In this document: piece by piece, positions 19,501 through 52,580 of the stretch
Numbering within the stretch: the stretch's first letter is position 1
Layout: the number at the start of each line of letters is the position of its first letter
Source of the DNA: Magallana gigas
Lineage: Eukaryota
Direction: 5' to 3'
Length of the DNA: 64,000 nucleotides
Assembly: GCF_963853765.1 (NCBI RefSeq)
Contig: NC_088853.1
Coordinates: 73,346,001-73,410,000, forward strand
Translations under genes and position numbers: made by a program
Notes under the pieces: generated by a model
Seen by the model: the letters and a program-made list of their open reading frames with translations, nothing else
Databases searched by the model: none
What the model was told of the DNA's origin: nothing

Positions 19501-22215
19501 TAAGACGCAGTGTGGCGCCTGGGAGAGATGCATTATGACACCTTAATGATATCATGTTACAATTTGACTTTATGTGATATCAAGACGCAATACGACGCCC
19601 TACACATGTGTATAGACGCTTATGTGAAATTCGACACATTTTGACGCACTGGTGATATGTTGACGGACTATCTCGCAATGGTTATTTTTGACGCACTACG
19701 ACGCCATGATAATATATATTGACCCAATATGACGCATAAGCGATACTTGACACATTACGGCGCCTTTGATGATATATTGACGCAATGTGACGCCCTCCTC
19801 TGTCTGTAGGTCTGTGCGTAGCACCATCAGCACTACAAGTCTTCACTATGCCATTTTGTCCGGAAAGTCCTCGGTATTTATTGCTTACGAAGGAGAAAGA
19901 AAATGACGCTATGAATGGTACGTATATATTTCCGGTCAGATTCTACATCAATGTGTTTGTGCATTGTGTTAGCTAAAGTCTCTACTGTTTTTTCATGTTT
20001 AAGAATGTATTTTCAGGTTTTCGCTATGAGTGAGATTTTCTAACTTTATTTTGATGTCATAATTAAACATATCACATTACTATTTCGTTAGCTCTGGTAA
20101 AACTCCGAGGGACCTCGGGTGTGGACGATGATCTTAATGAAATGAGACAAGAGCACCAGGCGATGCAATCCGAAAAGAAGGCATGCAAATCGATGATTTC
20201 TTTTTTCACTAAAAATCTATTGCCAGTTTCTCTCTTCTTTTTTTTTTTTACACTTTTACTCTTAAAATAGATTGGGATCTTGCACCTGCTGAAGAAGAAG
20301 TCACTGCGCATGCCCCTAGTCATCAGTATCGTCATGCATCTATCACAACAGCTGTCGGGAATCAATGCGGTAAGGACCCTTTCTTTTATTTCCTGTGCTT
20401 GCAAATGCATTCTGATACCCATTTTAAGCCAACACAAAATAACTTTTTGCTTGGTGTTGCGTCCTGCCCCATTGAAATACCCCCACCCCTTCCCCCTTCT
20501 CGCTGATACAAGTTTATAAGCAAAATAAAAAAAAAAACATTGTTGCATAGAGATTTTCATTTTTTACCAATTTTTGATAAGTTATGTTTCAATTTTAAAC
20601 AATTAGTAAAAAAAATTCCCCACTCCCTCATTCCTGGGTCTAGAAAGCTCCAGGGCAATTCCAAACAAAAAAAATTTAAAAGAATGTTTATCAAAACACC
20701 ATTTCCGCATGCGCATAATACCATGCGTCACAGTTCGTATCATATGTGAGCGAATAAAACCCTACTCATCATACTTGTTGCTTTTTCAGATATTCTATTA
20801 TTCATTCAAATTGTTCACCAGCGCTGGAATTTCCGATGATCTGGCTGCGCACGCAACAAGCGGAATTGGCGGCATTATGCTTGTGATGACGTTGATAACC
20901 ATTCCATTGATGGACAGGATCGGTAGGCGGACCCTACATCTGACGGGGTTGGCGGGAATGTTCGTCTTCAGTATCCTCATAACCATTACGCTCTCCTTTA
21001 CGGTAATTCAAGAGGGCTTACGATTGACTTGTTTTGTCTAATACAATTTGCTGATTTGTTTTCAATTTATTATTGTTTTGTTGACTTTAACTTAAGACAA
21101 GTTTAATCAACATAATTCCTGTTAACTAATTGATTTTGACTTTTAAGGTACTAGATTTTACTGTTTAACCTATGCTATTTAAATTGTTGTATTGCATATA
21201 TTATATATTTTTATTCTTTAGGACAAGGTTCGGTAATTTGTGTTGTAATAAGCTGTTATGTTGATCTATCTATTTTTATACAGGACACGGTTCCGTGGAT
21301 TGTGTCGTAATAAGTTGTTTTATTGATGTTATATTTATCAATTCTTCAATTCTTTAGGACAAGGTTCCGTGGTTTGATACCGCTAACGTGGTTGTCTCCC
21401 TTGTCTATGTGGTTTTTTTCGCCATGGGGCCAGGTATTTCAAAAAGAAAATCACCAATTCCTTTACTAAACTGTTCACAATTAGTATATAATATTTAGAT
21501 CAAAATCTTACCGAACTCATAAACGCTTAATCGTGATTAACTTTTTTCTTAACAGGATCTATACCATGGATGATAGTAGCGGAACTGTTCACGCAGGGAC
21601 CGCGGGTTTCCGCAATGAGTATATCGGTTCTGATTAACTGGGCGTGTAACTTTGCTGTTGGATATGTGTTCCCCATTATGCAGGTAACTCAAATACATCT
21701 GATTATATTCGCTCTTTGTAAGACTAGAAAAATTAATGTTATTTAATTTTCTGGTGAAAAATATGTAGTTTCCTGTGAGAAACGATTAGATGTGAAATTA
21801 AATTGCATGAAACACAACTTTCAGGACAAATTCTTGATGACAGGAAATGTCTTTCTTTAACATAACTTAAGATATCATACATATATGTATCAAGTCGTTA
21901 TCGCTAGCAAGGATCGTCCTTTTAAACAGATTTTTCAACTTTGAACATTTATTAGAGGTTAAAAAGGTTTTTTTTCTGTTTTTTTTCTAGAAAGAACTAA
22001 ATAACTTCTCCTTCCTGCCTTTTACGGCATTTCTCCTGTTCTTTTGGATCTTTATTTATGTATACCTACCAGAGACTAAAAATAGAACATTTGAGGATAT
22101 AGCCTCGTCTTGGAACAAATCTCAAAGCGAGGCGGGGAACCCCCAGGCTAAGTATATCCCAACGGAAGACACGGCTATTGTGGAATTTCAACAACAGCAG
22201 AGAAGCAATCGATGA
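15537..22215 (+). CDS. SLC2A1: class I facilitated glucose transporter (SLC2A1/Glut1-like), MFS sugar porter
   Basis: Exons 15537-15632, 16720-16880, 16983-17107, 18958-19128, 19810-19917, 20092-20180, 20271-20369, 20790-21002, 21358-21433, 21556-21683, 21991-22215 join in frame (1491 nt, 496 aa + stop). Motifs [72 protein letters not shown]; N-glycosylation NES in loop 1. Orthology to SLC2A1 specifically is not proven. Confidence 0.93.
15841..16478. mobile_element. non-autonomous DNA element with long terminal hairpin (copy 1, in GLUT intron)
   Basis: Arms GACAGGAAAGCCCTGGAGTGTTATGTCGCCC / GGGCGACATAACACTCCAGGGCTTTCCTGTC; both ends match the copy at 44654-45300. Confidence 0.8.
16485..16528. 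repeat. (TA)n microsatellite
   Basis: Pure TA run directly after the hairpin element. Confidence 0.95.
17108..17830 (+). repeat. degenerate intronic tandem repeats including two copies of the GLUT exon 16983-17107 3' end and donor
   Basis: Copies at about 17366-17433 and 17525-17590 of AGAGAGGCCCACTCCTACGAGATGATCATAGTGGCCAGACTGCTGATAGGGTTCAACTGTG|GTAAGT, interspersed with TTAAGGTACATCACC subrepeats. Confidence 0.8.
19490..19800. repeat. degenerate ~30-35 bp intronic tandem repeat
   Basis: Recurrent GATATATTGACGCAATACGACGCC-like units upstream of the 19810 acceptor. Confidence 0.6.
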
Positions 22216-22660: not shown

Positions 22661-23526
22661 TAGAAAACAATAAGTGTAAGAGACTTGTTATCATTATATA
22701 ACCAGCCACCAATCTTCTCCGGTTAGTTATTGTTCAAACATTATTATCCGATTCATACGCATTTCTGTCAACCTAAATCCTATATAATAGAAAAATGCCG
22801 ATGATATACGATTGCATGTAAATCATTTTGAGCTAATTAGACATCTGCTATATCCATGCACGCCGTTCGTATTCCCTCTTCCCTCTTCCCGGCTGTACAT
22901 ACACTCAGGAGAATGTAGACATACAATGTATCTGAAATAGAACGCTGTGTTTACACAGATGTGTGTCAAACGATGCGTGATTAACGAAGTTATGAAAAAT
23001 TGACCTTTTTAACGTCATTTCTTAAAACACAGGACAAGGTTGATAAAAATGTTATTTTTAATATTTACAGTACTTAATATATTTCTCAGCCATATCAATT
23101 ATTGATATATTTATGGACTTCCTGATCTAGAAAAAGGCCAGGAATGGGGTACGGACCTTTGTGAAAAATTCAAATTCATTAAATATTCACATAGTAGGTT
23201 TAATAAAATTAAGCCCGGGACACACTCCTTACCTTACCCCAAACAAAACAAAGTTATTCTTCGCGCTCGGCCCCGGAAAAGTTTGCTTGATCCGCGCATG
23301 GACTACCCTATCAGATCCCACCATGCATCTTTACAGGCCTAACAGGTATGACCCTCCGTGAAGAATTCAAATTTACATAATTTACATTGTAAAATCACAA
23401 ACATTAGACCTGGAATATCCCACCCGGTAAACAAAAGTATTCCTCGCCACCCCCCCCCCCCCTCCTTTAGAATATTTTTCTGGATCCGCGCACTTATTAA
23501 AAAATCCCACTCTTTCTTTAACTAAC

Positions 23527-26453
23527 CTAGCAGACGTCCGACCTGCAGACACAGTACGTGCAGTCTTTGTGGTCCACCAGGTACTCTCCCTTACAGCGTA
23601 AATCACAAACTTGTTTTGAAAGCTCGCAGTCGATTGGGTCGTGTGTTGTGACGTTAAACTTGCCGGAAGTAGCTGTGACTGGCGCAGCAGTAGAGGAAGT
23701 GGCCTGTTTCTGGACCGTGGTCGCTTTTTGGGTCACTGTAGTAGATGGAACTGTTGTCGCTAAAACAACATAAAGAAAAGTGTAAAAACATGATGATATG
23801 AAACAGTTTATGGATTGTTTTGCATTAGTACTTGTAGAAAGACATTAATGAAAACACGAAATCAAAGTTAAAGCCATTGTTTCTATTAACTAAATGTACA
23901 CGTGTGGTAATAGCCAATTCTATATACAAAAACGTTTCATGTTAAGTATTATCTCAAAATGTAATTTTCAAGCAATGCTCTTTATTTATTGTAACTGGAT
24001 GTATACAGTAAAGAAAAACAAGTCGAAACTACAGAAAGTGGGGTTCCTTCATTGTTATATTTGTAGGGTAATCCCCAACCCAAGTTTATTTAAGGCGTAA
24101 CGATCATTGATTCATATATTTAATCAAACCTTAGAATTAAGCTTTGAACAAAGTAGACTGGAGTGTTTTTAAAAAGGTCTTCTAATCAACGAAGTATACT
24201 TTTTTGGAAAAAGATCACTATTTTCAAATATAAGAAAGGTTGATTTAAGTTGTTCTTATTTGGTCAGTTGATTGCTAAAGTAAAGAATAGTAATGGCGAC
24301 GTACTTTGGTGAGAGTTGTCACACATGCAGAATTCACATCCGGTTCCGCCCTTGACGTAGTATTCACAGTTGAGGGGACAGCTCTGCTGGGAGGGGATGC
24401 ACGGATTCTGAATGTGATGGTGAGTCCCGTCAACCGATAGCAGGTGCGTGTCTACAAAGTGAAGCAATAGACGGTCCTAAGAGAAAAATGCAAGTGCCCG
24501 TTCAAATGGGCCATGACACGTATAATAATCCATCATAAAATACAACATACAATTATGTTACCGGCTTAATAGGTCTATTTTGATACAATGAAAAATGATA
24601 TTAAAAAAAAACCGTTTATATTCAATACTAAAAATGTTTGACGATGATTGGAAAACCAAACTTTGTAAACAAATAAAGAAAATGTAGGAAATCCTTAAAA
24701 TAGTTGATGGTATTTGGTGATATCTCTTGGTATCTACAGTTTTGGATTATCGCCTCTTCCTTTAAAGTAGCAGATATCATAGCCTGACCCATCCTTTATA
24801 TAACACTTTAATTATATCTGCTGATATCGGTTGATATTTGTTTCTGATACTAAACAGTGCCATTGCAGTGGCAGAAATCGCAGCCTTGTCCAATCTTTAT
24901 TTAACACCTTATTTATTTCTGCTGATATCTGTTCAGTTTCTGATTTTCACCTGTGCCTTTGAAGTGGCAAATATTGCAGCCTGGTCCAATCTATATATAA
25001 CACTTTCATTATATCTGCTGATATATGTTGATATCTACAGGATCTGATTCTCATCGGTTCCGTTACAGTGACAGATATCGCAGCCTGATCCGTTATTTAC
25101 GTCAAATTTTCTCATATACATGTATGATAATATCAGCAGTCACTGATTCTCCCCGGTGCCTTAACAGTGGCAGATATCTCAGCCTGATCCGTTATTTACT
25201 TCAAATTTTACTGATATACATGTATGATGATATCAACAGTTTCTGATTCTCACCAGTGCCTTAACATGGCAGATATCACAGCCTCGCCCGTTATTTACAT
25301 AAAGTTTTACTGATATCTGTTGATATCTACAGGATCTGATTCTCACCTGAACCTTTACAGTGACAGATATCACAGTCTGATCCAATCTATAATATAACAC
25401 TTTCATTATATCTGCTGATATATGATGATATCTACAGGATCTGATTCTCACCTGAGCCTTTACAGTGACAGATATCACAGCCTGAACCGTCCTTCTCGTA
25501 CCCGTTGGCACAGTTCAGTCGACAGAACATCAGGATGGGCTGACAGTGGGAGCTAAACGAGTCCAAGAAAAACCCCTCCGTCATCGCTAAAAATAGAATA
25601 CAGAAAACACTCCGTTACTGCTCAAAAATACAAAAAAACCTCCGTTACCGGTATAAATAAAATACACAAAATCCCCTCCGTAACTGCTGAAATATATAAA
25701 ATGATTTTTGTGTTGACCGGTTTACTGGTCTAAAAGCAAAATAGTCAGACAACTACCTTACAGTTAATAGAGATCCGTCTGACCTCGGTGGAACGGAAAT
25801 AGCCGAACATTTTCAGATAATGTAGATTCCTATTTAACCTAGTGAAATTAATATCAGCATAAAATCGCAAGAAACACCCTTTGCGGATTTTAAAACCTCT
25901 CCATTATTTTTTAGGAACTAATACCTATACGAAAAAAAGGGGAAAAGTTCCTCTTTCGTGATTTTATATTCTCGCAATTGGATGCAAAATAGCAGGATCG
26001 CGGAAGGATGGATGCTACGTATATTACAATGCTTGCAGTGAATGGTATAAGAAAGCAGTTATTGATTGGGATTTGGGTAAACTATGATTTGGTAGACTTT
26101 CAGGCTGTGATTCTCAAGGCTAAACGAATTCTAAGTTGTCCTTCAACTTATTCTATACAATAAAACAACATAAATTGCTCTAAAGTCATTGAATAATTGG
26201 ACAAAAATATCCTAAAAACGCCCTGGCTCCCACAAAAATCATACAATCATTAAAAAAGATTCCTACAAAGTGACTGTCATTTAGAATACCACATTTTAGT
26301 ATCTTGGAAATTTACAAACAATGAAATATTGACTTAATTAGTAATAACTCTATCATCATATCAAATACATTAAAATTAGGTTAAAACAAAAAAAAAAGAC
26401 ACTTTAGTATACCGACCAATCATTAAGCAGATTATCGCCCCGACACTCCTCAT
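23527..26453 (-). CDS. secreted antistasin-like protein B (3 modules, about 183 aa)
   Basis: Exons 26453-26417 (MRSVGAIICLMI), 25586-25452, 24451-24305, 23759-23527 in frame, all phase-1 introns; signal ...AMTEG|FFLD; modules C-x6-C-x3-C-x9/10-C-x2-C-x-C; Thr-rich linker. The 3' end is ambiguous. Confidence 0.85.
24755..25450 (-). repeat. about 100-bp intronic tandem array, about 7 copies of the 3' end and donor of gene B exon 2
   Basis: Repeated (minus) GGCTGTGATATCTGTCACTGTAAAGGxTCAG|GTGAGAATCAGATCCTGTAGATATC at about 25340, 25247, 25148, 25048, 24945, 24850, 24755. Confidence 0.88.
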
Positions 26454-27309
26454 GTTCCCTGGTTTTTCTTTATTGCCTGACTGTGGAGTACGACAAGGAA
26501 TCTTACTCTGTCCCGAGCTATTGTCTGTGTCCACGTATATATATGTATATATGTAGAGGTCTGCATCATGATCGCCAGATATTATAAAGATGATAATTCG
26601 ATAAGATGCAGGTGTATTCATCTAAACGGAAATAACAGTTTGATAGCTGGACACTGGTCAGTCATAACAGGTCGTGTAACAGACTGATATGGGTTCGAAG
26701 GTCAAGGTCGCATGCTTCACTCAAAATGCCGGAAGTAATATTTTGTTCAAAACCATCATATGAATTCTTAACACGCAGAAGTCTACTTAAGCTAATGACT
26801 TACCCGATTATTTACCCATTATATAGCATATTTTTCTTCTTTGCTTACTCTTTGTATATATTTCTCATTTGGCAAGAAATTCAAAAGAATTGTCATTTTA
26901 CAAAACATTGACATTATACGACATTTAAAGAGTGCTTTTCCGCAGATGTTCAATTCTCTATAGATACCACTGAACAAGATATTGTAAGCGTCATGTACCA
27001 TAAGTCACCATTGTTATGTTTATTAACAATCTACATGTTATGGCGTAAGTTGTTTTTGTAATTTGTCGAGGGTATAAATATCTTCGCCTATGATTTTATT
27101 CACCTGTATAAATGGTGAAAACATTTTATACTTGCGAACGCATACTAGTATCTGAAAAAGAGAGTTTACGTAAACATGAATAGTTCCTTTTTTTATAGAA
27201 CAAACGCTTATAAGAAACAACGATGAAACTATTTGTGAAAAAACTTTATTTGATTCATTTTAACACTTGACACCTAGTTTAAATACATAATAACATCCGA
27301 AAAACGCCG

Positions 27310-28416
27310 TCACGGTGTCGCGGGGAGCGTGAATTGACATGCGCAGTATTGACAGCCACGTGGTCCGCGCAGGTATCCATGGTAACAGAACACGTTACAG
27401 ACGTCCAGTCCTAGCACGCAGGGGTTCATCAGTTTAATGTCGGGCTCGTCCGCCTTCTCGATACCAGCTGTAATGTATGAAGTTTACGCATAAATAAATC
27501 ATTTTCTAACATCGGATGTAAACTACTCTTGGAAAGGGAAGGGGGGGGGGGGGTAAGTACAATTTACAAAAAATATATATTAATACGTAAAGGAAGAGCA
27601 TGCATTTCATAAACAGTATAGAATTATTGAGTATGCATAAACAAAGTGGTGTGAGCCTAAATCATAAATATATATACATATCACATGTCTATATCACCTA
27701 GCCTTAAACGTTAGATTTAATCATTTCCCATTATAAATCTCCGTAAGACATTTGTTTTGTTCCTGTGAACTTTAATGAGTGAAAAATGATAATTGTTCAA
27801 TGAAGATATCTTGGACAAATTCCCTTTTATCGATTCCAATTGATTTCTTTCACAGGTATGTGTATTTTTATTAAAAATCTTCAAAAAGTAATGGAAGCAA
27901 TAACTTGGGACAGACTATAGCTGGATGTTAAAAAAAAGGTTGTCGTTCTTGTCAAAATCAAAGTACTGAGAAGACTGAATACGTACACTAACCGGACTTG
28001 TAGACCTCGTCTTTGCACACACAGCGGCGGCAGTCGACCGTGTCCGCCAGGAAGCCGTGCTTACACTTGATCTGGCAGATCGTGAACGCAATGGCACACT
28101 CGTTGGCCATGTGACCGGAAGGAAACGAGGTGGTAGGTGGCGCTACATCACTTCCGGAAGGCTTTACTGTGTGAGAAGGAAAAAAAGAATTAAATTATTT
28201 CATACATATAAATAAATACTTATTATACACAACTTATAGTATGATGCAAACGGGTTGGAAATCAAAATATCAGAGTAATTTGTAGAGCAAATGAAAAAGG
28301 GTTAGATTATGAAACAAAGTCTATTTAAATATACATGCATGATGAGATTAGTTGATTAAATTGTGTGCAGAAATGCATTAATGTGTTTTAGTGTGGAGTA
28401 AAGGCCAAACACTAGT

Positions 28417-28507
<91 letters not shown>

Positions 28508-29172
28508 CTTTAATCGATATATGTAAAAAGCTTAGTAAAGCAATTAAAACTTTTATTTTGGCTTAAATTTCTGTATTCTCTGCATTTTTAATTGCTGGGG
28601 GCGGTTGCCGAATCAAAAAAAAATACCAGACAAGTATGTCATTAGATTTAAGAAAAAAATGTTCCATGCAAGTAAAACTGTGGAGATGCTACGTAATGAC
28701 CCTCTACAACAGCAAGAAGACATCGACAACAAGAACGTCAATAAGAACAACATCAACAAAAGCAAAAATGATATCAATCACAACAAAAACAACCACAACA
28801 ACAAAAACAGCATCAGCATCAACCAAAACGACAACAACATTAACAACAACAACATTAACAACACCATGCAGCAACAATCAGTGAAAACAACAACAATAAC
28901 AGAAGCATCAAGAATAACATCATGAACATCAACAACACCGACCTGTGGTGGTCTGTAATGGCGCGGTGGTTTTGGCGGCACACATGCAATACTGACATCC
29001 CCCGGGGCCCAGGATGAAACCGTTCTGACAGTTAGCGGTACACACGTGTTGTCCGTCCTGGCAGGGGTTCGGGAGATAGTAGGCTAGAGTTGTCGTTCCT
29101 GTTAACGGCGCCGTTGAGGGCGCTGTTCGAATCAAAGTTCCCTTTACAATAACTGATTGTCAAACTTAATAC

Positions 29173-29208
<36 letters not shown>

Positions 29209-29312
29209 CGACCCCCCCCCCCCCCTGGAAAATGAAAATTTATTAAATTTACATAGTAAAATTATCGCGAAAATATGCCTCGGAACCCCCCGGGCAAACA
29301 CAATTATCCTTC

Positions 29313-29346
<34 letters not shown>

Positions 29347-32086
29347 ATGATACATACAACTTTTGGTAAAATTCTTAATATAGTACTTTACAATATATGA
29401 TGTTGGAATTCGCGCTAGTCAATAATGACATTGGATCTTCTAAACTCGTCGAGATAATTTATGTCAATGGGTCAAGCAGATTATCTATAATTGTTCGTCC
29501 GTTGTCGTTTTCCGCTGCTGTTTCTTTTAAATCAATCGTTTTTGTGGAAGTTATTTATAATAAAAACTATATAAACAAGTCATTGGACTTTCGGCAAGAT
29601 GTAATGATCTATTTCTTGAATAAAAGAAAGTTAAATATGACGCTAGTAAAGTAAAATATGCACAGATTGCCGTAGTCTAAGCTCAAAGCCAGAAAATTGT
29701 ATTCCTTTCAAATGACCAGCAATGAAATAGACAGGCCAACGTCACATTGCTGTTTGTTACAACTGTCCAAAGTCTTGTTAAAATNNNNNNNNNNNNNNNN
29801 NNNNNNNNNNNNNNNNNNNNNNNNNNNNNNNNNNNNNNNNNNNNNNNNNNNNNNNNNNNNNNNNNNNNNNNNNNNNNNNNNNNNNNNNNNNNNNNNNNNN
29901 NNNNNNNNNNNNNNNNNNNNNNNNNNNNNNNNNNNNNNNNNNNNNNNNNNNNNNNNNNGGACAAGAGATTTAGTTAGACAGAAACATTGATGTTTGTTAC
30001 AACTGCCCAAAGTTTAATCTCCTGTTTAATCTCCTGTTTAATCTCCTGTTAAGCTGGTTCTAAGTAAGCCCTCACCTTTAGTGTAGACGAGCCCCGGGAT
30101 GAGGTTCCTACACAGACAGTACTGACACCCGTCCGGCCCCAGCAGGTAGCCCTCCCCACAAAACTTGTCACACACGGTCTGGTTCTGAATGCACGGGTTG
30201 GTCATGTGAACCTGGACCCCGTGGGTGGTAGGCGGAGGGGTTGTCGTTATGGGATCTAAAAGGCAACACGTCATTGTCTACAGACTATAACACAAAGTTG
30301 TGTAATCAAATTGATGCATTTTATTAATCCTTATACTTAAACTTTTTTTTGCCATCATATTTATAGAATTGCGTAATTTTTTGTGACTTTTTTTATTATT
30401 AATTCAATCAAAGTATAAATAACGTAAATAAACAATTCAGGTTATAATATTTATCATACATTTTTGTCAGTTAACCCTGCACAAATGGTGACTGCAGTTA
30501 TACTGTTAACAGTTTGTTTTATGGCGTATGTTTGCATTATCACAAACTGACCCGTAACGTTGCCTTGGTAACAAATACAGAATTGACATCCGCCACTCCC
30601 TGTGAGGTAACCTTCGGGGCAGTTCCTGGGACAGAACTGTTGTTGCGGTAAACACGGATGATGGTAACCGGAAGTAGATGCTGGGTAACCATGCGCACTT
30701 GCCTCAGATACAGCAGCGGAATCTTGTATAATATAAACATTTGATTTATTAATTGTATGTTTGAGGTAAATGGTTGCTTTCTTAACGAGATGTGATTACA
30801 ACATACGATTAAGAAATATATTCAGCAAAAGACAATTCCGCTATGGTTTCCACGTGTTAGAACCATTTAACAAGATCTTGGACTTTCAGTAGAGCGTAGC
30901 TATCTATTCCGTACGTCAAAAAATTAAAAATGTCGTGGTTCCGAGCGAAGTCTTAGTTCAAAAGCTAGACACATATCTTGTTGATTTCAAACAGCCGTGG
31001 TTGAATGGCCAGCAATGAAATATACAGACATACGTCACATTGCTGTTTGACACAAAGTCCAAACTTTTGTTAAAAATGGTTCTAATCGCTATCAACCTGT
31101 GGTTTGGACATACACATGTAGATGAATACAATCAGGCTAAATTGTATTCAAATTAAGACAAATCGTCTCAGGACTTTTTGTCCAATTTTTAAAATCAGGA
31201 ATAGAACTTAATGAGTGCGTTTTATTTTTATACGTTTTTTCACACTGATAACTTTTTAATGCCTCAGCAAAATCCTTTTACAATTAATTGGTAAATGTTA
31301 ACAGGAGGACGAACATGTACTATTATCTAACCAATGCTGTTTATGAATGAACTGTCATATATAGTATTACACAGGGACCACCTTACGGTGTATCCACAAT
31401 GCACTAAGACTTAACGTATAATCAGGCATCAAAATGAGGTCAGGGGTCACTGAGTAACAGTGTAAACCTATATCACGTGACTAGTCAAAAAGTGCCGTCT
31501 CAATAATAGATCAAAATATGAAAATTAAGATGATTGTCTTATAGTTTGTAGTTTTCATTCAAGATTTTATGGAATAAAAAGAATAAACGGATGTAATTTG
31601 GGTGACCTACAAAAGTTATTAGGCTGAATTGCACTTTAAACGTTAATAAAGACACAATTATTAAATAGTGTTTACTTTTTTTTATTTTATTCATTTAATT
31701 TTTTTACTTTAATTCTATTGTTTTTTGAATTTTTAAATGGTGCTTAATTGGAGTTGAAATAATTAACACCTATTAGAAGGGATCGCAATTTCTCAGATTA
31801 TTGCTAAAACTTCAAGTATAGCAATGAATATGAGAAGGCTTTTTAAATCAACCTTATTAATTAAAATCGTTGAGTTGTGATGTAAGAGTTACGGTTGATG
31901 ATGCCAACATTACTCACCAGACGACGCTGTGGCGCACTTGCAGATTGTACATCCGCTGCTGTCTTTGGCGTATCCGTTATGGCAATTCAACGAACAGAAC
32001 ATAGGATACAGGGAACACAACAGGAATCCCTCACAGACGGCTGGAATCAACAATAACAACGACACCAAACTAGCACTTCCCGCCAT
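27310..32086 (-). CDS. secreted antistasin-like protein A (6 modules, 353 aa)
   Basis: Exons 32086-31918 (MAGSASLVSLLLLIPAVCEG|FLLC...), 30722-30552, 30255-30076, 29152-28943, 28166-27993, 27467-27310 (TGA); 1062 nt in frame, all introns phase 1, one C-x6-C-x3-C-x10-C-x2-C-x-C module per exon; AATAAA at 27249-27244. The N-gap at 29785-29958 could hide sequence. Confidence 0.9.
28419..28500. repeat. (TA)n microsatellite
   Basis: Pure TA run in a gene A intron. Confidence 0.95.
28720..28940. repeat. imperfect (AAC)n trinucleotide repeat
   Basis: AAC/AAT/AGC-rich tract inside a gene A intron, right after the 28943 donor. Confidence 0.85.
29174..29349. mobile_element. MITE (176 bp), TIR CATGCGCGGATC, 5-bp TSD ATACA
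   Basis: Near-identical to 8274-8448; ATACA on both flanks; inserted about 22 nt upstream of a gene A acceptor (29152). A degenerate third copy is at about 23290-23492. Confidence 0.88.
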
Positions 32087-33028
32087 GGCGATATATATAG
32101 AAAGAAAGAGGCGGTGATTGTCTCACGGCCGTTTCTGCAAGTGGTTGACAGAGTGCAATGTTACAGAAACACTCTAACTTTTTCAAATGCTTAATCCAAA
32201 TTCTTGTTCCAATTGCAAAACTTTAATTGAATTCGAGGTTCGTCCAATATACATCAATTTCGGTTTCTCAGTAGTCGTTGTCCTATTGGCGATGTAGGTT
32301 TCATTGTGACGTCATTTTGGTAGTATTTTGGTTTATTTCCTACACTTTCTTTTGTATAAACCCCAACTCTATAGAAACTAATAGCTTGTTTTACTAATTG
32401 TAATACACACACACAGGAATCATTTTGAGTCACGGGGTTATTTTGCTGAATTACACAATGTATTTAGTAGAGTTTGTACTTGGGAGATACTAAGATAAGA
32501 AACCATTTAGTGCAAAGTCCCTTATCCCGGATCACCGCACTAAATGACTGTATCCAGTTCATTCATATATCCAGGACTTCTTAATTTGAGTGTGCATGTA
32601 CGAATAACAACTTAGTTACAAACTCTTTGTCAACTGAAAACACCAACTTAGCCGTATTCATGAGAATTTTTTAATTAAAAAAATTGGGTTTATTAGCTTT
32701 TTTCAAACGTTGTTTTATATTGTGGTTTATATCAAATTGATCGATTTTATAAAAAAAAAAAAAAAAAGTTCTTAAATAAATATATTGGAGTTGAAATTTT
32801 GATGATTTGTTTAGAACCTAAAAGTCGGTATTTGTAACCAAACATAGGTATAGTAAGTCTTAAAAAATCATATACACTATACCAAAACGTTTCTTTAATC
32901 ATAATCATACCTATCATTTGTCTGTTTTATCGAAAGAAATATCATTTACCCGGGGAGGTGGGAGTAGTATCGTTTCAAATTTTGTGTGTATTGTGTTGTA
33001 CAATACAGTGATATTGAAATTGTATTTG

Positions 33029-33420
33029 CAGTGGCGTCGGAAGCAAATTGAAAGGGGGGCTAGACTAATCTTCAGAAATCTTGACAAGCGAAAAAAAATC
33101 CCAAAATCATGAAAATCCTGATCCATGAAAGGGGTGGGGTGGGTGGGAGGGTAGTATACTTGTTACGAAAAAAAAAATCTTTCCTACCAAATCATGAAAT
33201 TTGTAATGCGTGGCGAGGGGGGGGGGGGGCTACTCTATAACTTTGACGCCAATTTTCAATACTACATTTAATATTTCAATCTTTTTTAGGGTAGATTAAG
33301 GAAGAATTATGTTTTCTGCGAAAACAAAATATGGGGGAGGGTGCTATGTGGCTAACTTTGCAAAAAAAAAAAAAGGCGGGGACTTAGCTCCTTCCTAGAC
33401 CCTGGGTTCCGACGCCTATG
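33029..33420. mobile_element. MITE with imperfect TIR CAGTGGCGTCGGAA / TTCCGACGCCTATG
   Basis: 12/14 TIR match; a right-end fragment of the same family is at about 53550-53665. No clear TSD. Confidence 0.65.
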
Positions 33421-34998
33421 ACCGAAACTTAGTGCATTCCTTTAACATATTAGGCATAATGAAATTGTGTGTAATATTCTTAAATGCGTGTTTTTTTCCT
33501 GTAAAACTAAAAATCAATATCTGCAATATAAGATTAAAATCTAGGTACTATTATAGCAATAAAAGAATAGTTTAATTTGCGCATAATTAAATCTGCCCTT
33601 TGACTTTCTTGGCTGCACATTATCTAATCTCTGTGCATATGCTCATGCATGCTGTGGTCTGAATAGCCAGCTCATAAATAAAAAATGGTGCCTCAACTCA
33701 TTGAACTATCGTTGGAATTGAACTTAAGCTTACCATTTTGGGAAATGAAATGCAGCAACGCCAATCCGACGAAAAACACGGAGGCTTTCCGCATGATTCA
33801 TGTGAGAAAGATCTAGTTCATTCATAAAATTATACGTCACTCTGACGCTGGCAGGTGTCCTTTTTTTTACTATCACGGGTCTTGTCTGATATCTCAAGTC
33901 TATGAATATAATCAACATGCATATATGAAGTCGTTGATGTAACCTTGTTATACCTCTCATGTTCACCTATACAGTGTTTGGTTTCAGTTTGATTTAGTTT
34001 TCACCTGGGGAAGGGTGCAATTTATTTTTTTCGTATTTGTTACTCGTTTGAACTACCATTTAATTATTTTTACAATGCCAAAAAGATGTGATACAACGAT
34101 TATTCTATAAATTAAAACCATTTTGTTAAAGTTTCATTGTACTAATCAGGTTATTTCATAAAACATGCATGTTATATGGAATCATTCAAATTAAGAGTCA
34201 TTTTTTATGGACCCCCCCCCCCCCCTCTCTTCTTTTTAAATATACAACGACTTCGCTCCTTGTTAAAAAATGGGATTAATTCAATACAGTTGAGTTATTT
34301 CCCTTTTAAAAACAATTGTCAACGGGCGAAAGAAAATAGGGACATAATCATTTACAAAAAAATAAAGAAGTAAAATAACAGACCGATTTCTGTTTCATTG
34401 ACTACAAATAGTCAAAAGGAAAGGTCATCCCAAAATAACTCACTGTTACAGAAATACTTCAGATAAAATTGTCCAAGATCGCTCTAGTTTATCGCCCACG
34501 GTGTTGTAACATCTGTTAAATATGAATACGTAATGGTTCAAGTATATTGCTGGCTTTGTCAACTTATAATTCGTGTGAATACTTTCGGTTAAAATATATT
34601 AAAATTTTTGAATTACTTCAAATGTATTTTGTACGTAAATCCGGTAGGCGATCAAATGTAATCGTTGCTTAATTAGTTTAATTACCGACATAGCTTACTT
34701 TAATATAGAATTGTCTGATTGCAAGTAGATACGTCTTGACACACAAACTTTGTTTTTCCTTTCTCCCAGAACACTGTTTTTGCAATCTTTGGACATACAA
34801 TATTTCCAAAGGCTAAAAATTGCCATGGGATAAAGAAACAAAGGATCTAACATTTGACATAGAATGCTGCACATTCATTACTTGTACCTTACTTTATTTC
34901 TTCACATTTGTAATGGATGACAGAAACAACCATCTCAAATATGTGAACATATACATCATGTCTAACTCATAGAACACAATGGCAGGGTTGGTATTTAT

Positions 34999-37900
34999 TC
35001 ACTGAATACATTCACACCGCGGACAGCCCCGGGAATCTACACGGTATCCGTTCATGCATTGCTTCATACAGTCAAAAATCCCCGGACAAACAAAACTTGC
35101 TACCCCGCCGGGAGAACTGGAACTGGCAAAAGGCACAGTAGTCAACGGAACCGGAGACGTAGATGAATCCGGAGGAGGAGCTGTAAACAAAATAGAATAT
35201 GTTGAATGACGCAATTACATGATTAAATCAATTGCATGTGTGACATTTTTTTCGAGGGGGGGGGGGGGGTATGTGACATTTTCATTCTTGCATAGATATC
35301 ATGATTTTATTACCTTGAGTAAATATATCGATGTCGGCGTTACACACACACAGAGGACATCCGGTCGCGTCTGTTTGATATCCGGTCCTACAGTCTAGTG
35401 TACAGAAAAAGTTTGCCAGACAGGCCTTCCCAAGGGGTGGGGCATCAGTCGTCGTAGAAACGCCGTTTACTGTTGTCGTGGAAGGCGTTGTTTGTGACGT
35501 CACTGTCACTGTTTGATTGACAGGTGCTGCAGTAGTGGTTGACGTAATGTTTTCTGTAACTCCTTTGAGTTTATCATAGTACGCCTTTAGATCTATTGGG
35601 AAATAGTTAGCAAGCAATGTTACTATATTCTTATACATGTATTTACAAAAAATGGGGGGGATGTCAGATACCTGACAATGAAGTTATAGAATTTCATATT
35701 AATAACTACCATTTCCACAGGCACATTTTGTGCATCCCTTTTCGTCGACAATTCGCTGGCACCAAGGAGGTGGGGCTGGACACGTATAAGGGGCGGGGTC
35801 ACAGTCCGTTTGATTGACATTCGGCGTTTTTTGATTGGTCAGTCCTGCAGAAGCTCCCATCATCGGATTCATTTGCCCCATGAATCCCCCCATAGGCGAC
35901 ATACCCCCAGAAAATCCCATCGGTCTCGACATTGGGGAGTTTCCGCTTCCGGACATGGGATTTCCTGAACCAAACATGGAGGCCATTGGATTCACTGGTC
36001 CCATTTGACCTATTCAATTTTTATAAGAGCAGGTTATAATTAGTATAAGAGGAACTACGTACAAAAGCGAAAATCAATTTATAAATTTTACAAAATTGCG
36101 TATCATATTAAGAAAATGTTAATAACCGTAATTAAAGTATGTTGATGTTAATTTTACTTGACCGGTGTAAGTATCAAGTAAAGTCAATATTTACAATAAG
36201 ACATTGGTTTTGAATTGTGTTAAAAAACACAAAGAAATTTAAATCTTATGTAGCTAATATTTATTATCTCATGACATGGTGTGGTAATTTCATTGGGAAA
36301 TACACATATCAACTGTTTTCAAACAAACTCACCGCTGTAGCTAGGAAATCCGGGAAAACCGAACCCGCCATTGTTACCATACATTGAAGTATCAAACGGA
36401 CTTAGTGCGCCTGCGCTGGCAGTTGCTCTAGAAGATCTGAAACTTCCTAAAATCAAATAAGGAAACGATTTTATCCATTTCCTCTTTTTTCTATCCCTTA
36501 ATATAAAAGCAGGGTCTAGTTGGAGTGCTTCTTATTTGAGTTGGATTTATGTATGATTCAGTGGCATGACTGTAAGATATTCCTCTATCTCAGGTATGCA
36601 TATTTTTTTTTTCAAGAATTGAGTCTCATCAACAATAAGTGATATACATGCTTTATATTATTACTCATTAGGTTCGTTACTGACTGTTTACAGAAATTTA
36701 CAGTCTGATATGTAAACAAACAAAAGATAATATATAACGATTAAATTCATAGCTTAATTCTCTAATTTTTTACCTTCCTCGTCAGTTGTTTACAAGTGCA
36801 AACCTCGATGCTATTGTAGGATCATAATATTACGTCACAGGTAATTAAAAGAGGGGTCACTCTAAATATTTTGGGGCTTAAAAATTAAAGGTATGGTTGA
36901 ACGTTTGTGTAAAAAATCAGCTAAAATAACGTTATGTCCGCCATGTTGCCGTTTAAATTTATGAGGCAATCACGTGACGCGATTCATCCAATGACGTCGA
37001 GACATTCTAGTCCGAGGCAAAACAAAAATATCTATAAACTAATTATGGCATTCGGAGAGCCCTTTAAAAAGGGTTAAGTTGTATATGTATATATACATAA
37101 TCATAAATGCGCTCCTTTGAATCGAACACTTATAAAGAGACGTATTTCTTTTAAAAATAAATTACTATATTTTAAATTATTGTTTTTTTTTTAGTTACTA
37201 AGTTGATAATTTAATGTTTTATCAGAAAATGATAAACCCGTTTACAAAAATACTTTTACCTACTGACTGGTAAATCTATTTATGTTGAAAATAAATTAAT
37301 GAAATAACTTGGCAATGCTAGTATTTTACGAGATAATATTTTTTCACGATCATTTGGCAATCGCTAAAAACATGGACATTTCGACCTTTCGAAATAAAAA
37401 AATTTTTATCGAAAAAATTCCGTAAATATGACTACACAAACAAAATGATTACATATTTCTGGATTATGTCCTGGGTTCTTAATTTGATAAAGACCACTTA
37501 AATTACTTTTTAGACACTCAAAACTATTAATCTACCATTTATGTGTATGCAAAATTTAACCTTCTTATAAGGTGAAAGTGAGAATAAAAAGTGATACAAT
37601 CCACTGGCCATTTATTTTCAAATAGCAGCAGTGTTATAATATAGATATAAGTAGATCCCAAGGTCAATGACCCCGGGGCAGTGACGGTGATTACCTAATA
37701 GACCACGTGACGGAATCTGTACGATTAACACCAATCCCCTAGGGACCGGCTGTACTAACTCACTCACGTAGAGAATAAGACGTGGCTCTAAGATAAGAGG
37801 TACCAGTTCAGGGAACCAGACCGTTCTCTCTAGCTGACAGTGTGTTCACTGGTCGACAACAATCTTTAAGTTAAAAAGATCTTCGTGTTCTTTGAAATAA

Positions 37901-38707
37901 TATCTCATTATGATTGGGTACATGTATTTTTTTTTTACTTTTTATCTGAATTCCTGTTTTTTTTTAAGTACTTGACAAATTTATACATGTTCATGTATGT
38001 GAAAAAAGGAGAGAGAAAACAATCATCTACATTTTTTAAAAAAAGTTCACAGTTCCATGCAATTGCCTTATAACATGTTGCCTTATAACTTGGACAACTA
38101 AACACGATCTCGTTGATAAACTCACTGTTACATTCACAAGTTCGGCAGCCATTCAAATCGGTGATGGTCGTACACCAAGGCGCAGGCAAGCATGATACTG
38201 AGTCAGATTTACATCGACTTCCATCTGACGCTTGTATCAATTTTTGGAAAAACATCTGTGCTGAAAAGTTGATTTGCTTATGAATTGAAATAATGTTAAT
38301 AACTTTTTTTTATTAAAATAATATTTAGTAAATTTTGAACATCCTTTTTTATTAGTGAATGCAGTAAAGACTATTTTCCCATACTGTGCACGTTTGAACA
38401 AAAACGATTTCAAAGCATTATTTAGAACATGTGTTACTCTGACATCTAGATAGATAAAACGCTACTGGCATTGTTGAGTGATTGTGCTGAACTGGCAATG
38501 TACTGACACCGTACTTAAAGTTAAGTAGCACTAGTACTGCACTTGTAAAGTGCTCAATCTGAATTCAGTGTAAACCATCAATCTGCATTGACGAGACCAT
38601 GCACTGAGTTTATAAGGTACCTACAATTAACATGCAAAATACTTACAATGAGCTTGATGTGTGAAATCGAAAATAAAAGATACGATACATATTAGCGTAA
38701 ATTTCAT
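34999..38707 (-). CDS. secreted antistasin-like protein C with Met/Gly/Pro-rich and Thr-rich regions (4 modules, 356 aa)
   Basis: Exons 38707-38647 (MKFTLICIVSFIFDFTHQAH, donor GTAAGT), 38260-38126, 36446-36333, 36009-35710, 35592-35314, 35180-34999 (TGA); 1071 nt in frame, all phase-1 introns. Confidence 0.85.
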
Positions 38708-52029: not shown

Positions 52030-52580
52030 GTGCGTTAGGGTATCCTTGGAGTTTCCTTGGATATCCATCGGGTTCCCTGGGATTCCTAGAGGTGTATCTG
52101 GAATACCAATGAGTCCTCAGGGTTAATAAGAGTTTTAAATTTGTATTATTAGGGTATCCTTGAGGTTCTATGGAGTATCAAGTGTTATGATTCTGTATTA
52201 TTAGGGTATTCTTGGAGTTCCTTGGGATATCCCTGGGGTTCCCTGTGGTTCTTAGAGGTGTGTCTGGAATACCAGTGAGTCCCCAGGGGTACCAAGAGTT
52301 TAAAATTTGTATTATTAGCGTATCTTTGAGGTTCCATGGGGTTCTATGGTGTATCAGGAGTTATAAATCTGTATTATTAGGTTATCTTTGGGGTTCCTTG
52401 GGGTATAATTTGGGTACCATGGGTAAGGGGTGACCCTTGCACTCTAATGAGACCCCCTTGGGTATCAATAGTTATTCATTTCTGTTATTGGGGTATCCTT
52501 GGGGTATCCTTGGGGTTCCTTGGGGTTTCCTTGGGGTTCCTTGGGGTTTCCTTGGGGTTCCTTGGGGTTCCTTGGGGTTA
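52030..52580. repeat. GC-rich degenerate tandem repeats (about 163-bp dimer plus 10/11-bp CCTTGGGGT[T/A] array)
   Basis: TATTATTAGGGTATC subrepeats; the 21-bp period encodes the PKEPQGN repeats at the end of the gag ORF. Confidence 0.8.

What the first reader, a model, noticed from the sequence alone, without database searches (positions are those of the whole stretch)
23527..38707. Tandem cluster of three secreted multi-antistasin proteins (13 modules)
Three co-oriented genes encode 3, 6 and 4 six-Cys modules. B is collinear with the first three modules of A (MFC[S/R]LNC.NGY.KD.SGC; PC.P.QQ.CP.NC; Thr-rich then NPC/DC..VCD..C) (seen). Only the C-terminal 6-Cys half of the leech antistasin domain is used, spaced by mucin-like Thr/Pro and His-rich linkers. 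Antistasin-like modules are known from protease inhibitors and CRIM1-like/invertebrate matrix proteins (established). A lineage-specific scaffold family for shell, adhesive or mucus matrix is inferred.
Basis: partly seen in the sequence, partly recalled or inferred. Interest (0 to 1): 0.7.

Follow-up and report, generated by a model that had tools for sequence, protein, structure and literature searches.

The report
Conserved oyster cluster of antistasin-like genes
Three neighbouring, expressed Pacific oyster genes encode secreted "beads-on-a-string" proteins built from 13 small disulphide knots related to leech antistasin protease inhibitors. The trio is real, conserved across bivalves and already auto-annotated, but its function is still untested.

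Summary
On the minus strand of 23527-38707 lie three co-oriented genes, in the order C, A, B. All introns are GT-AG and phase 1, with one Cys module per exon. They carry 4, 6 and 3 six-Cys modules.

- **Assembly gap.** The gap at 29785-29958 lies inside intron 3 of gene A, between two copies of a repeat. RNA contigs from three studies join exon 3 directly to exon 4 across it.
- **Identity.** The genome is Magallana (Crassostrea) gigas. Gene A is the RefSeq "antistasin / CRIM1-like" gene. Gene C is LOC105336430.
- **Modules.** Eleven modules match Pfam Antistasin and the reactive-site subdomain of antistasin, guamerin, bdellastasin and hirustasin. Two modules of C are a divergent subtype with a Pro/Trp loop.
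- **Correction.** B's third module is closest to A's fifth, not its third.
- **Conservation.** The same 13 modules in the same order occur in Saccostrea. Parts of the cluster occur in Pinctada and scallops, and orthologues occur in mussels, unionids and clams. Non-synonymous change is low.

Function is untested. My best guess (about 0.45) is multi-headed extracellular serine-protease binders. The main rival (about 0.35) is a structural matrix or mucus protein.

The scan also noted antistasin-like modular genes elsewhere in this genome. I did not verify those notes.

The parts
38647..38707 (-). Gene C exon 1: ATG at 38707, signal peptide, phase-1 donor
   Evidence: same N-terminus as RefSeq XP_011439038 (P0206)
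38126..38260 (-). Gene C exon 2: divergent six-Cys module V1 (C-x6-C-LPAPW-C-x8-C-x2-C-x-C)
36333..36446 (-). Gene C exon 3: Gly/Phe/Pro/Ser-rich linker, no Cys
   Evidence: spliced this way in Logan RNA protein P0203
35710..36009 (-). Gene C exon 4: Gly/Met/Pro-rich region with the conserved NPMA(S)MFG motif, then divergent module V2 (…PPPW-C-QR…)
   Evidence: single copy in the genome
35314..35592 (-). Gene C exon 5: short predicted helix, Thr-rich linker, canonical module (35342-35422)
   Evidence: (28.3 bits)
34999..35180 (-). Gene C exon 6: Pro/Ser-rich linker, canonical module (35008-35088), TGA stop overlapping AATAAA
   Evidence: (32.9 bits)
33734..33794 (-). Gene A alternative 5' coding exon (second signal peptide, MRKAS…), phase-1 donor, spliced to an internal acceptor at 32040
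   Evidence: used in RefSeq isoforms P0179 and P0180 and conserved in C. virginica P0215
31918..32086 (-). Gene A exon 1: proximal ATG at 32086, signal peptide, module A1 (31934-32017)
   Evidence: (32.6 bits)
30552..30722 (-). Gene A exon 2: His-containing linker and module A2 (30571-30654)
30076..30255 (-). Gene A exon 3: Thr/Pro linker and module A3 (30110-30193)
29785..29958 (.). Assembly gap (N) inside intron 3 of gene A, between two 93%-identical copies of a repeat; skipped by the mRNA
   Evidence: (joint 29122->30076 in X1, X3, X8)
28943..29122 (-). Gene A exon 4: Thr-rich linker and module A4 (28980-29063)
27993..28166 (-). Gene A exon 5: module A5 (28015-28098). Read-through of its donor gives the short RefSeq isoform ending …KSG
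27310..27467 (-). Gene A exon 6: module A6 (27337-27420), TGA stop ending at 27310; 3' UTR runs to about 27230 after AATAAA at 27250
26417..26453 (-). Gene B exon 1: ATG at 26453, first half of the signal peptide, phase-1 donor
   Evidence: (joint 25586->26417, depth 570 in X1)
25452..25586 (-). Gene B exon 2: end of the signal peptide and module B1 (25462-25545; loop Arg-Leu-Asn)
   Evidence: (32.3 bits)
24305..24451 (-). Gene B exon 3: His-run linker (HHHIQNP) and module B2 (24321-24401)
   Evidence: (joint 24451->25452)
23527..23759 (-). Gene B exon 4: Thr-rich linker, module B3 (23545-23628), TAG stop at 23529-23527
   Evidence: (the loose end at 24305 matches this exon's start)

Best explanation
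SHOWN. The stretch holds three adjacent, co-oriented, transcribed and spliced genes of the Pacific oyster. C is 356 aa (LOC105336430), A is 343 aa (RefSeq "antistasin / CRIM1-like", UniProt A0A8W8P4Y2) and B is 183 aa.

Each gene encodes a hydrophobic N-terminus read by eye as a signal peptide, followed by 4, 6 or 3 six-Cys modules. There is one module per symmetric phase-1 exon. Linkers are rich in Thr/Ser/Pro, and in C also in Gly/Met. AF2, run on C only, models C's linkers as disordered.

Eleven modules are the reactive-site subdomain of antistasin-type (MEROPS I15) serine-protease inhibitors, without the N-terminal four-Cys subdomain. Two modules of C are a derived subtype in which the three-residue loop is replaced by a five- or six-residue Pro/Trp loop.

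The trio is an old paralogous set. It is kept in the same order in other oysters, partly in pearl oysters and scallops, and is under purifying selection.

INFERRED, most likely mechanism. These are secreted, probably O-glycosylated beads-on-a-string proteins. Each canonical bead presents the Cys2-P1-P1'-P2'-Cys3 loop as a substrate-like (standard-mechanism) ligand for an extracellular serine protease. That would make A and B multi-headed protease binders or inhibitors with mostly non-trypsin specificities. P1 is Ser, Pro, Asp, Thr, Gln and Asn in A; Arg, Pro and Asp in B; Thr and Met in C.

C would add a conserved Gly/Met-rich flexible segment and two non-inhibitory knots, which could anchor it in a secretion or matrix.
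For: - **Gene models and expression:**
- **Species and database identity:**
- **Domain identity:** full-length A, C and B orthologues pass the Pfam Antistasin cut-off of 21.2 bits (58.2, 50.3 and 26-29 bits) and hit no other family. The module profile hits antistasin (E = 2e-4), guamerin (5.5e-4) and bdellastasin (9.2e-4), with the P1 residues Arg, Met and Lys of those inhibitors aligned to the residue after Cys2.
- **Fold:** the AF2 module model has pLDDT 75. Its seven best matches among 350,542 PDB chains are all antistasin-type inhibitors, at rmsd 0.8-1.2 Å.
- **Loop behaviour:** the loop is three residues long in all 11 canonical modules, and P1' is aliphatic (Leu, Ile, Val or Ala) in 8 of them. 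It is the least conserved segment between oysters and scallops (0.27 identity against 0.42-0.60 for the other segments), as in inhibitor families.
- **Constraint:** against Saccostrea, dN is 0.08-0.13 in modules and 0.21-0.32 in linkers, with dS saturated.
- **Gene order:**
- **Precedent:** antistasin-family transcripts are reported as abundant protease inhibitors in a mussel digestive gland (PMC5549309).
Against: - No activity, tissue or proteome data exist for these genes.
- Only B1 (Arg) and C's last module (Met) have a P1 typical of known antistasin-type inhibitors. B1's Arg is His in Saccostrea and Ostrea.
- Two of C's modules lack the canonical loop. They align to the others only over their last 14 columns (hhalign probability 80%).
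- Thr/Pro mucin-like linkers, His runs and a Gly/Met-rich segment also fit a structural matrix protein (PMC7591529). Multi-antistasin proteins have been reported in mussel byssus and limpet shell.
- Slow one-to-one orthology is unusual for fast-turnover digestive or immune inhibitor families.
- Foldseek E-values are not significant for so small a model (0.9-5), and AF2 may have learned these folds.
Confidence: 0.45

Rival explanations
1. Structural scaffold. The proteins are building blocks of a secreted material such as mucus, shell or periostracum matrix, hinge ligament, cement or crystalline style. The knots serve as rigid, protease-resistant cross-linking or binding beads. The glycosylated and Gly/Met-rich linkers serve as spacers or elastic segments. 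No protease inhibition is involved.
For: - Linkers are 35-38% Thr+Ser+Pro.
- C has a 108-residue linker with 20 Gly and 13 Met, and a motif (…NPMA…) invariant from oysters to unionids.
- The His run before B2 is conserved in oysters and scallops.
- P1 residues are mostly unlike those of known inhibitors.
- Two modules have no canonical loop.
- Met-rich regions are reported as common to insoluble shell and ligament proteins of Pinctada (PMC7591529).
- Perna viridis byssus-related ALP has 8 such repeats (PMC5435178).
- Lottia shell proteins carry antistasin-like domains (PMC3374290).
- All named homologues are bivalve.
Against: - No peptide or tissue evidence exists for these genes. C's motifs were not found in the held supplements of the Pinctada paper.
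- Non-synonymous change is low and orthology is one-to-one with conserved order. This is unlike my expectation, from general knowledge, that shell-matrix genes evolve fast and are lineage-specific.
- The inhibitor loop length is retained in all 11 canonical modules.
- Contig depths suggest A and B are not expressed in a fixed ratio. B exceeds A in X1, while A is 20-40 times B in X3 and X8 (a poor measure).
Confidence: 0.35
2. Extracellular ligand binders. The modules bind growth factors (as suggested by the automatic "CRIM1-like" name) or sulfated glycoconjugates, and so regulate signalling or adhesion rather than proteolysis.
For: - RefSeq names some A and B orthologues "cysteine-rich motor neuron 1 protein-like".
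- A reference cited in PMC5435178 carries the title that antistasin binds sulfatide and resembles proteins that bind sulfated glycoconjugates. I did not read that paper.
- Deep one-to-one conservation fits a specific partner.
Against: - Pfam finds only Antistasin. No IGFBP, VWC or transmembrane part of CRIM1 was detected.
- The name comes from automatic annotation.
- There is no evidence for any ligand.
Confidence: 0.1
3. Not functional. B is a truncated pseudogene copy of A, or the cluster is an assembly artefact around the gap.
For: - As first read, B's module exon lacks a signal peptide.
- A 99-bp minisatellite and a second tandem repeat flank that exon.
- An N gap sits inside gene A.
Against: - B has its own 5' exon, and the spliced product starts with a hydrophobic N-terminus that looks like a signal peptide. 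It is abundant in run X1 at depth about 570.
- B orthologues of 179-196 aa exist in Saccostrea, Ostrea and scallops, with a partial 158-aa model in Pinctada.
- The gap is intronic and is skipped by mRNA in three studies.
- Full-length cDNA contigs encode the 343-aa A.
Confidence: 0.02

Closest known systems
Leech antistasin-type inhibitors (antistasin 1SKZ, hirustasin 1BX7/1HIA, bdellastasin 1C9P/1C9T, guamerin 3BG4; MEROPS I15, Pfam PF02822)
   Same: - Same six-Cys pattern.
- Sequence profile match at E = 2e-4 to 9e-4.
- Predicted fold within about 1 Å over 23-25 residues.
- Same three-residue Cys2-Cys3 loop that carries P1 in the inhibitors.
   Different: - The N-terminal four-Cys subdomain is absent.
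- There are 3-6 modules per chain, joined by long glycosylatable linkers.
- P1 is mostly Ser, Pro, Asp, Thr, Gln or Asn, not Arg, Lys or Met.
- Activity is untested.
Molluscan multi-antistasin proteins reported in the literature: Perna viridis antistasin-like protein (byssus-related, 8 repeats; PMC5435178), Lottia gigantea WAP+antistasin shell proteins (PMC3374290), Pinctada NSPI3/4 (Antistasin+Kunitz; PMC9290575)
   Same: Secreted molluscan proteins with tandem six-Cys antistasin-like repeats.
   Different: - Those are mixed with WAP or Kunitz domains, or are tightly packed repeats.
- Here Antistasin is the only domain type, with one module per exon and long linkers.
CRIM1 (the source of the automatic name "cysteine-rich motor neuron 1 protein-like")
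   Same: Contains antistasin-like modules (from general knowledge; the name appears).
   Different: No IGFBP-like domain, VWC repeats or transmembrane segment was detected. Only PF02822 is found. The genes are not CRIM1 orthologues.
Met/Gly-rich molluscan matrix proteins (abductin, Pinctada LMP, NU-5, MRNP34, as discussed in PMC7591529)
   Same: The composition of C's 108-residue linker (Gly 20, Met 13, plus Phe, Pro and Ser) resembles these.
   Different: This is a compositional likeness only. No sequence match was tested or found. C's segment has a conserved motif rather than a long repeat array, and it is flanked by Cys knots.

Membership tests
Antistasin-like domain (Pfam PF02822 / MEROPS I15) | Six-Cys spacing C-x(4-9)-C-x3-C-x(9-10)-C-x2-C-x-C | tested here: met
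   Met by 11 modules. Not met by C's two V-type modules, which have 5-6 residues between Cys2 and Cys3.
Antistasin-like domain (Pfam PF02822 / MEROPS I15) | Pfam HMM score above the gathering cut-off of 21.2 bits | tested here: met
   - Whole proteins: A 58.2, C 50.3, B orthologues 26.3 and 29.4 bits.
- Single exons: A1 32.6, B1 32.3, C5 28.3, C6 32.9 bits are above the cut-off. A3, A4, A5, B2 and B3 score 11.7-19.3 bits, below it.
- V-type modules: only 2 of 21 give weak hits.
Antistasin-like domain (Pfam PF02822 / MEROPS I15) | Sequence homology to solved inhibitors, with the reactive-site loop aligned | tested here: met
   Profile against the PDB: antistasin 2e-4, guamerin 5.5e-4, bdellastasin 9.2e-4. 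P1 Arg, Met and Lys align to the residue after Cys2.
Antistasin-like domain (Pfam PF02822 / MEROPS I15) | Fold of the C-terminal subdomain (short turn plus beta-hairpin, three disulphides) | tested here: inconclusive
   The AF2 module model has pLDDT 75. Its top seven Foldseek PDB matches are all antistasin-type inhibitors (rmsd 0.8-1.2 Å, TM 0.58-0.66), but E is 0.9-5. Disulphide pairing could not be read.
Leech-type full antistasin domain (10 Cys) | N-terminal four-Cys subdomain before the six-Cys part | tested here: not met
   In A, B and C the only Cys residues outside the modules are in the signal peptides, plus B's last residue.
Functional I15 inhibitor | Measured inhibition of a serine protease; a P1 residue suited to a target | not testable with these tools
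   P1 was read from alignments: Arg only in B1, Met in C's last module, otherwise Ser, Pro, Asp, Thr, Gln or Asn.
CRIM1 | IGFBP-like domain, VWC repeats, transmembrane segment | tested here: not met
   Only PF02822 is found in the full-length proteins.
Shell / ligament matrix protein | Identified by mass spectrometry in the material; expressed in the secreting epithelium | not testable with these tools
   The gene and protein identifiers I searched for gene A's M. gigas proteins, gene C and several A, B and C orthologues appear in no paper of the searchable library. No motif hit was found in the held supplements.

The most novel reading that the evidence does not exclude
Gene C could be a component of a bivalve-defining secreted structure such as the hinge ligament, periostracum or crystalline style, with A and B as co-located partners.

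C has kept the same architecture from oysters to freshwater unionids: signal peptide, Pro/Trp-loop knot, Gly/Met/Phe-rich flexible segment with an invariant NPMA motif, second Pro/Trp-loop knot, short helix, mucin stalk, then two canonical knots. In this reading, derived antistasin knots that have lost the inhibitor loop act as cross-linking nodes for an abductin-like elastic segment.

That would be a new use of the antistasin fold, and a conserved three-gene material cassette.
Probability: 0.12. Interest if true: 0.65.

Novelty: new member of a known kind. Interest (0 to 1): 0.35.

Why it matters
If A and B are multi-headed inhibitors with unusual P1 residues, they would point to unstudied extracellular proteases in bivalve digestion, immunity or shell formation. 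That matters for oyster aquaculture and disease.

If the scaffold reading is right, gene C offers a conserved, testable candidate for a bivalve-wide secreted material.

Either way, the cluster is a clean example of exon-by-exon module duplication with symmetric phase-1 exons, kept in order across a deep split (oysters to scallops).

Set against that, the genes are already in RefSeq and UniProt as antistasin-like, and secreted multi-antistasin proteins are known in molluscs. The surprise for a specialist is modest.

Tried and rejected
- **Complex prediction.** I submitted module B1 (P1 Arg) with Streptomyces griseus trypsin. The tool does not pair a eukaryotic chain with a microbial one, so nothing was folded. 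The job was counted and there is no verdict.
- **AF2 of full-length C.** With 13 orthologues the mean pLDDT was 43, with modules at 50-65 and linkers below 35. This was too poor for a fold search.
- **ESM Atlas look-up of C.** No usable hit.
- **Literature.** M. gigas identifiers for genes A and C (K1QK01, LOC105336430, three XP accessions) and six orthologue LOC numbers gave no paper. CGI_10021371, an "antistasin" in a larval shell-formation study, could not be linked to this locus. The phrase "cysteine-rich motor neuron 1" together with Crassostrea gave none. SRA run numbers of the cDNA contigs gave no relevant paper, so the tissue of origin is unknown.
- **Pinctada Met-rich protein paper.** C's motifs are absent from its held supplements.
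- **Raw poly-A reads (X19).** They covered only repeats, not the exons, so there is no strand or end information.
- **Earlier scan note.** It describes Gly/Met-rich spacers with antistasin knots elsewhere on the chromosome.
- **dN/dS.** Synonymous sites against Saccostrea are saturated, so the ratios are only rough upper-bound style estimates.
- **Pseudogene reading of B.** Rejected.
- **Hidden exon in the gap.** Not used by any contig seen. A rare isoform cannot be excluded.


Full report
**What is there**

All six-frame ORFs with Cys-rich translations in 23.5-38.7 kb lie on the minus strand. A regex scan of the whole 64-kb window in six frames finds 11 canonical six-Cys modules. All are minus-strand, between 23545 and 35422, and there are none elsewhere. 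Two more six-Cys units with a longer second loop lie at about 38.2 kb and 35.8 kb.

Reading the sequence gives three genes whose introns are all GT-AG and all phase 1.

- **Gene C:** 38707-34999, 6 exons, 356 aa.
- **Gene A:** 32086-27310, 6 exons, 343 aa, plus an alternative 5' exon at 33794-33734.
- **Gene B:** 26453-27527 corrected as 26453-23527, 4 exons, 183 aa.

Each module sits in its own exon. The finding's end coordinates are exactly B's stop codon and C's ATG.

**The gap**

The N run at 29785-29958 lies in intron 3 of gene A. Its two flanks are 93%-identical copies of a 30-nt stretch of a repeat, which also occurs in intron 1.

RNA contigs from three runs of three studies join 30076 directly to 29122, with ends CT..AC, which is GT..AG on the minus strand. 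One 1333-nt contig runs through exons 6, 5, 4 and 3 and onwards. Exons 3 and 4 are both phase 1, so the reading frame does not depend on the gap.

No exon from the gap is used in the transcripts seen. I did not try to fill it.

**Transcript support**

- Full-length cDNA contigs of 1.36-1.56 kb from several public runs encode the 343-aa protein A. They map to the window as exactly the six predicted exons, ending about 20 nt after the AATAAA at 27250.
- For B, contigs give the junctions 25452/24451 and 26417/25586. A loose end at 24305 matches the start of the last exon. The junction to 26417 reveals a short 5' exon. With the first residues of exon 2 it makes a plausible signal peptide. B is therefore complete and not a truncated copy.
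- For C, exons 3-6 are joined as predicted in a Logan RNA-derived protein. The whole model equals RefSeq XP_011439038, apart from a few substitutions.
- Contig depths suggest that A and B are not expressed in a fixed ratio. B is about 570 against A at 250-400 in X1. A is 64-139 against B at about 3 in X3 and X8. Depth of contigs is a poor measure.

**Whose genes**

Runs that hold the stretch are labelled oyster. Protein A is 99.7% identical to UniProt A0A8W8P4Y2 of Magallana gigas. The window's chromosome length, 76,070,991 bases, equals that of the RefSeq record carrying these proteins.

RefSeq calls gene A "antistasin" or "cysteine-rich motor neuron 1 protein". It calls gene C "uncharacterized LOC105336430". 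UniProt calls them "Antistasin-like domain-containing protein". The genes are therefore already annotated automatically. I found no paper that studies them.

**What the modules are**

- Full-length A, C and B orthologues pass the Pfam Antistasin cut-off and match nothing else. Single exons score from 11.7 to 32.9 bits against a cut-off of 21.2.
- A profile of the 11 modules finds only antistasin-type inhibitors in the PDB. These are antistasin at residues 26-54 and 85-109, guamerin 26-57, bdellastasin 25-56 and hirustasin 21-52. This is the C-terminal subdomain that carries the reactive site.
- In those alignments the inhibitors' P1 residues (Arg, Met, Lys) fall on the residue just after the second Cys.
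- An AF2 model of one module, built with 46 aligned modules, has pLDDT 75. Its seven best matches among 350,542 PDB chains are again these inhibitors, at rmsd about 1 Å. The E-values (0.9-5) are not significant for so small a model.
- Outside the modules there are no Cys residues, apart from those in the signal peptides and B's last residue. The N-terminal four-Cys subdomain of the leech proteins is therefore absent.

The two remaining modules, both in C, have Cys2-(x)PxPPW-Cys3 in place of the three-residue loop. They align to the canonical modules only over the last 14 columns (hhalign probability 80%). They get weak Pfam hits in 2 of 21 sequences and have no PDB match. I read them as a derived subtype that cannot present a canonical reactive loop.

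**Relations between the genes**

A maximum-likelihood tree of 65 modules from oysters, scallops, a mussel and a unionid has only 34 columns, so many forks are unresolved. It still places each module with its orthologues.

- B1 groups with A1 of oysters.
- B3 groups with A5, with support 99/97.
- B2 falls in the clade that holds A2, but its closest relatives there are A3/A4/A6 (90/95).

The RefSeq short isoform of A reads through the exon-5 donor and ends …KSG. B orthologues end …SDLG or …NDIG directly after their last module. This fits B3 being A5-like. "Collinear with the first three modules" is therefore only partly right.

**Conservation**

- In Saccostrea echinata, the same 13 modules lie in the same order and orientation: C of 359 aa, A of 355 aa, B of 188 aa. 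A sugar-transporter gene follows on the other strand, as in the window, where 20709-21041 matches Pfam Sugar_tr.
- In Pinctada imbricata, C's four modules are followed by A-type modules.
- In Argopecten irradians, A (406 aa, six modules) is followed by B (196 aa).
- C orthologues with the same four-module plan occur in Ostrea, scallops, Mytilus and the unionids Sinanodonta and Potamilus.
- A-like proteins occur in Ruditapes, Mya, Mactra and Dreissena.
- Every named relative is a bivalve.

Against Saccostrea, synonymous sites are saturated. dN is 0.08-0.13 in modules and 0.21-0.32 in linkers.

Between oysters and scallops, the Cys2-Cys3 loop is the least conserved segment, at 0.27 identity against 0.42-0.60 elsewhere. 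P1 changes often, while P1' is usually Leu, Ile or Val.

**How it probably works**

The following points are shown or read directly from the sequences:

- The N-termini are hydrophobic and look like signal peptides. No predictor was available.
- There are no other Pfam domains.
- The linkers are rich in Thr, Ser and Pro, and AF2 models C's linkers as disordered.

The function is inferred. I think the most likely activity of the 11 canonical beads is substrate-like binding of extracellular serine proteases. Three observations point that way:

- The fold and loop geometry of the inhibitor are kept.
- The loop is hypervariable on a conserved scaffold.
- Tandem inhibitor heads on flexible linkers are a common design.

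The weak points are the P1 residues, which are mostly Ser, Pro, Asp, Thr, Gln and Asn, and the complete lack of data on tissue or activity.

It is supported by the mucin-like and Gly/Met-rich linkers, by the conserved His run before B2, and by C's two loop-less knots. Reports of antistasin-like repeats in mussel byssus-related and limpet shell proteins, and of Met-rich regions in insoluble Pinctada matrix proteins, also support it. Slow, one-to-one evolution fits neither a typical shell-matrix gene nor a typical fast-turnover inhibitor family. It does suggest a specific, conserved partner or structure.

**Verdict**

The finding is real and its description is largely accurate. The gap is harmless.

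The genes are members of a known kind (secreted multi-antistasin proteins of molluscs) and are already auto-annotated. What appears to be new is the following:

- The conserved C-A-B arrangement.
- The B3-A5 relation.
- The Pro/Trp-loop module subtype.
- The conserved Gly/Met motif of C.

Function remains open. I give about 0.45 to multi-headed protease binders and about 0.35 to a structural role.

Noticed in passing
window 24857-25490: A 99-bp minisatellite of about 5-6 copies (72-79% matches) in B's intron after exon 2. Its unit is a copy of the 3' end of that exon plus the GT donor (…GGCTGTGATATCTGTCACTGTAAAGG…gtgagaatcag). The intron therefore carries a row of decoy exon-end and donor copies.
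   Followed up: partly
window 25566-25701: A 34/64-bp tandem repeat that overlaps the acceptor and first codons of B's exon 2 (…gtaacggagg(g)ttttt…). A minor RNA joint 25586->25757 (depth 3.6, run X8) uses a donor just upstream of (5' to) this repeat instead of the 26417 exon.
   Followed up: partly
window 29169-29349 (A intron 3); similar sequence at about 23360-23500 downstream of B: A short element with inverted ends (CATGCGCGGATCC … GGATCCGCGCATG) and poly-G/C tracts. Two runs hold contigs that skip exactly 181 bases here (joint 29168->29350, non-splice ends AT..TG, with CAAAA between). This looks like a presence/absence polymorphism of a MITE-like insertion.
   Followed up: partly
window 33734-33794 and 32040: Gene A has two alternative signal-peptide starts. 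One is an upstream exon (MRKAS…, used by RefSeq models and conserved in C. virginica), spliced to an acceptor inside exon 1. The other is a proximal ATG at 32086 (MAGS…), used by all Logan cDNA contigs seen.
   Followed up: yes
window 27990-27993: Read-through of the exon-5 donor of gene A (TCC G|gt tag) gives a five-module RefSeq isoform ending …KSG. The same short isoform is annotated in C. virginica and C. angulata.
   Followed up: partly
window 23530-23532: B ends …SDVC in this assembly, which leaves an unpaired C-terminal Cys. Saccostrea, Ostrea and Pinctada end …SDLG, and scallops end in IG (…NDIG, …ADIG, …AQIG). This may be a lineage-specific change or an allele. The conserved terminal Gly is unexplained.
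   Followed up: no
window 27680-27900, 29080-29480, 29680-29880: Intronic stretches of gene A with very high summed contig depth in RNA runs (up to about 16,700) and many loose ends. They are copies of abundant, transcribed repeats, not exons.
   Followed up: no
window 20709-21041 (+): An exon of a sugar transporter (Pfam Sugar_tr, E = 2e-14) on the opposite strand downstream of B. Saccostrea echinata has the same neighbour.
   Followed up: yes
window 45311-46615 (-): A 434-aa uninterrupted ORF encoding a leucine-rich-repeat protein (LRR_8, E = 5e-32).
   Followed up: partly
window 52465-53514 (-): A 349-aa ORF with a weak retrotransposon gag / PNMA match (E = 1e-3) and a Pro-Lys-Glu-Pro-Gln-Gly repeat at its end. 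It is probably part of a retroelement.
   Followed up: no
window 41486-42406 (+): A 306-aa ORF rich in Asn, Arg, Ser and Thr, with no Pfam match.
   Followed up: no
window 555-1663: A 79-bp satellite of 14 copies, with 94% matches.
   Followed up: no
G000 C3:18,667,589-18,713,530: Eight further Pfam Antistasin matches above the cut-off lie within 46 kb on another chromosome. More lie at C1:27.81-27.83 Mb, C1:13.25 Mb, C1:70.37 Mb, C6:26.18 Mb and C6:28.81 Mb. The oyster therefore has several other antistasin-module loci.
   Followed up: no
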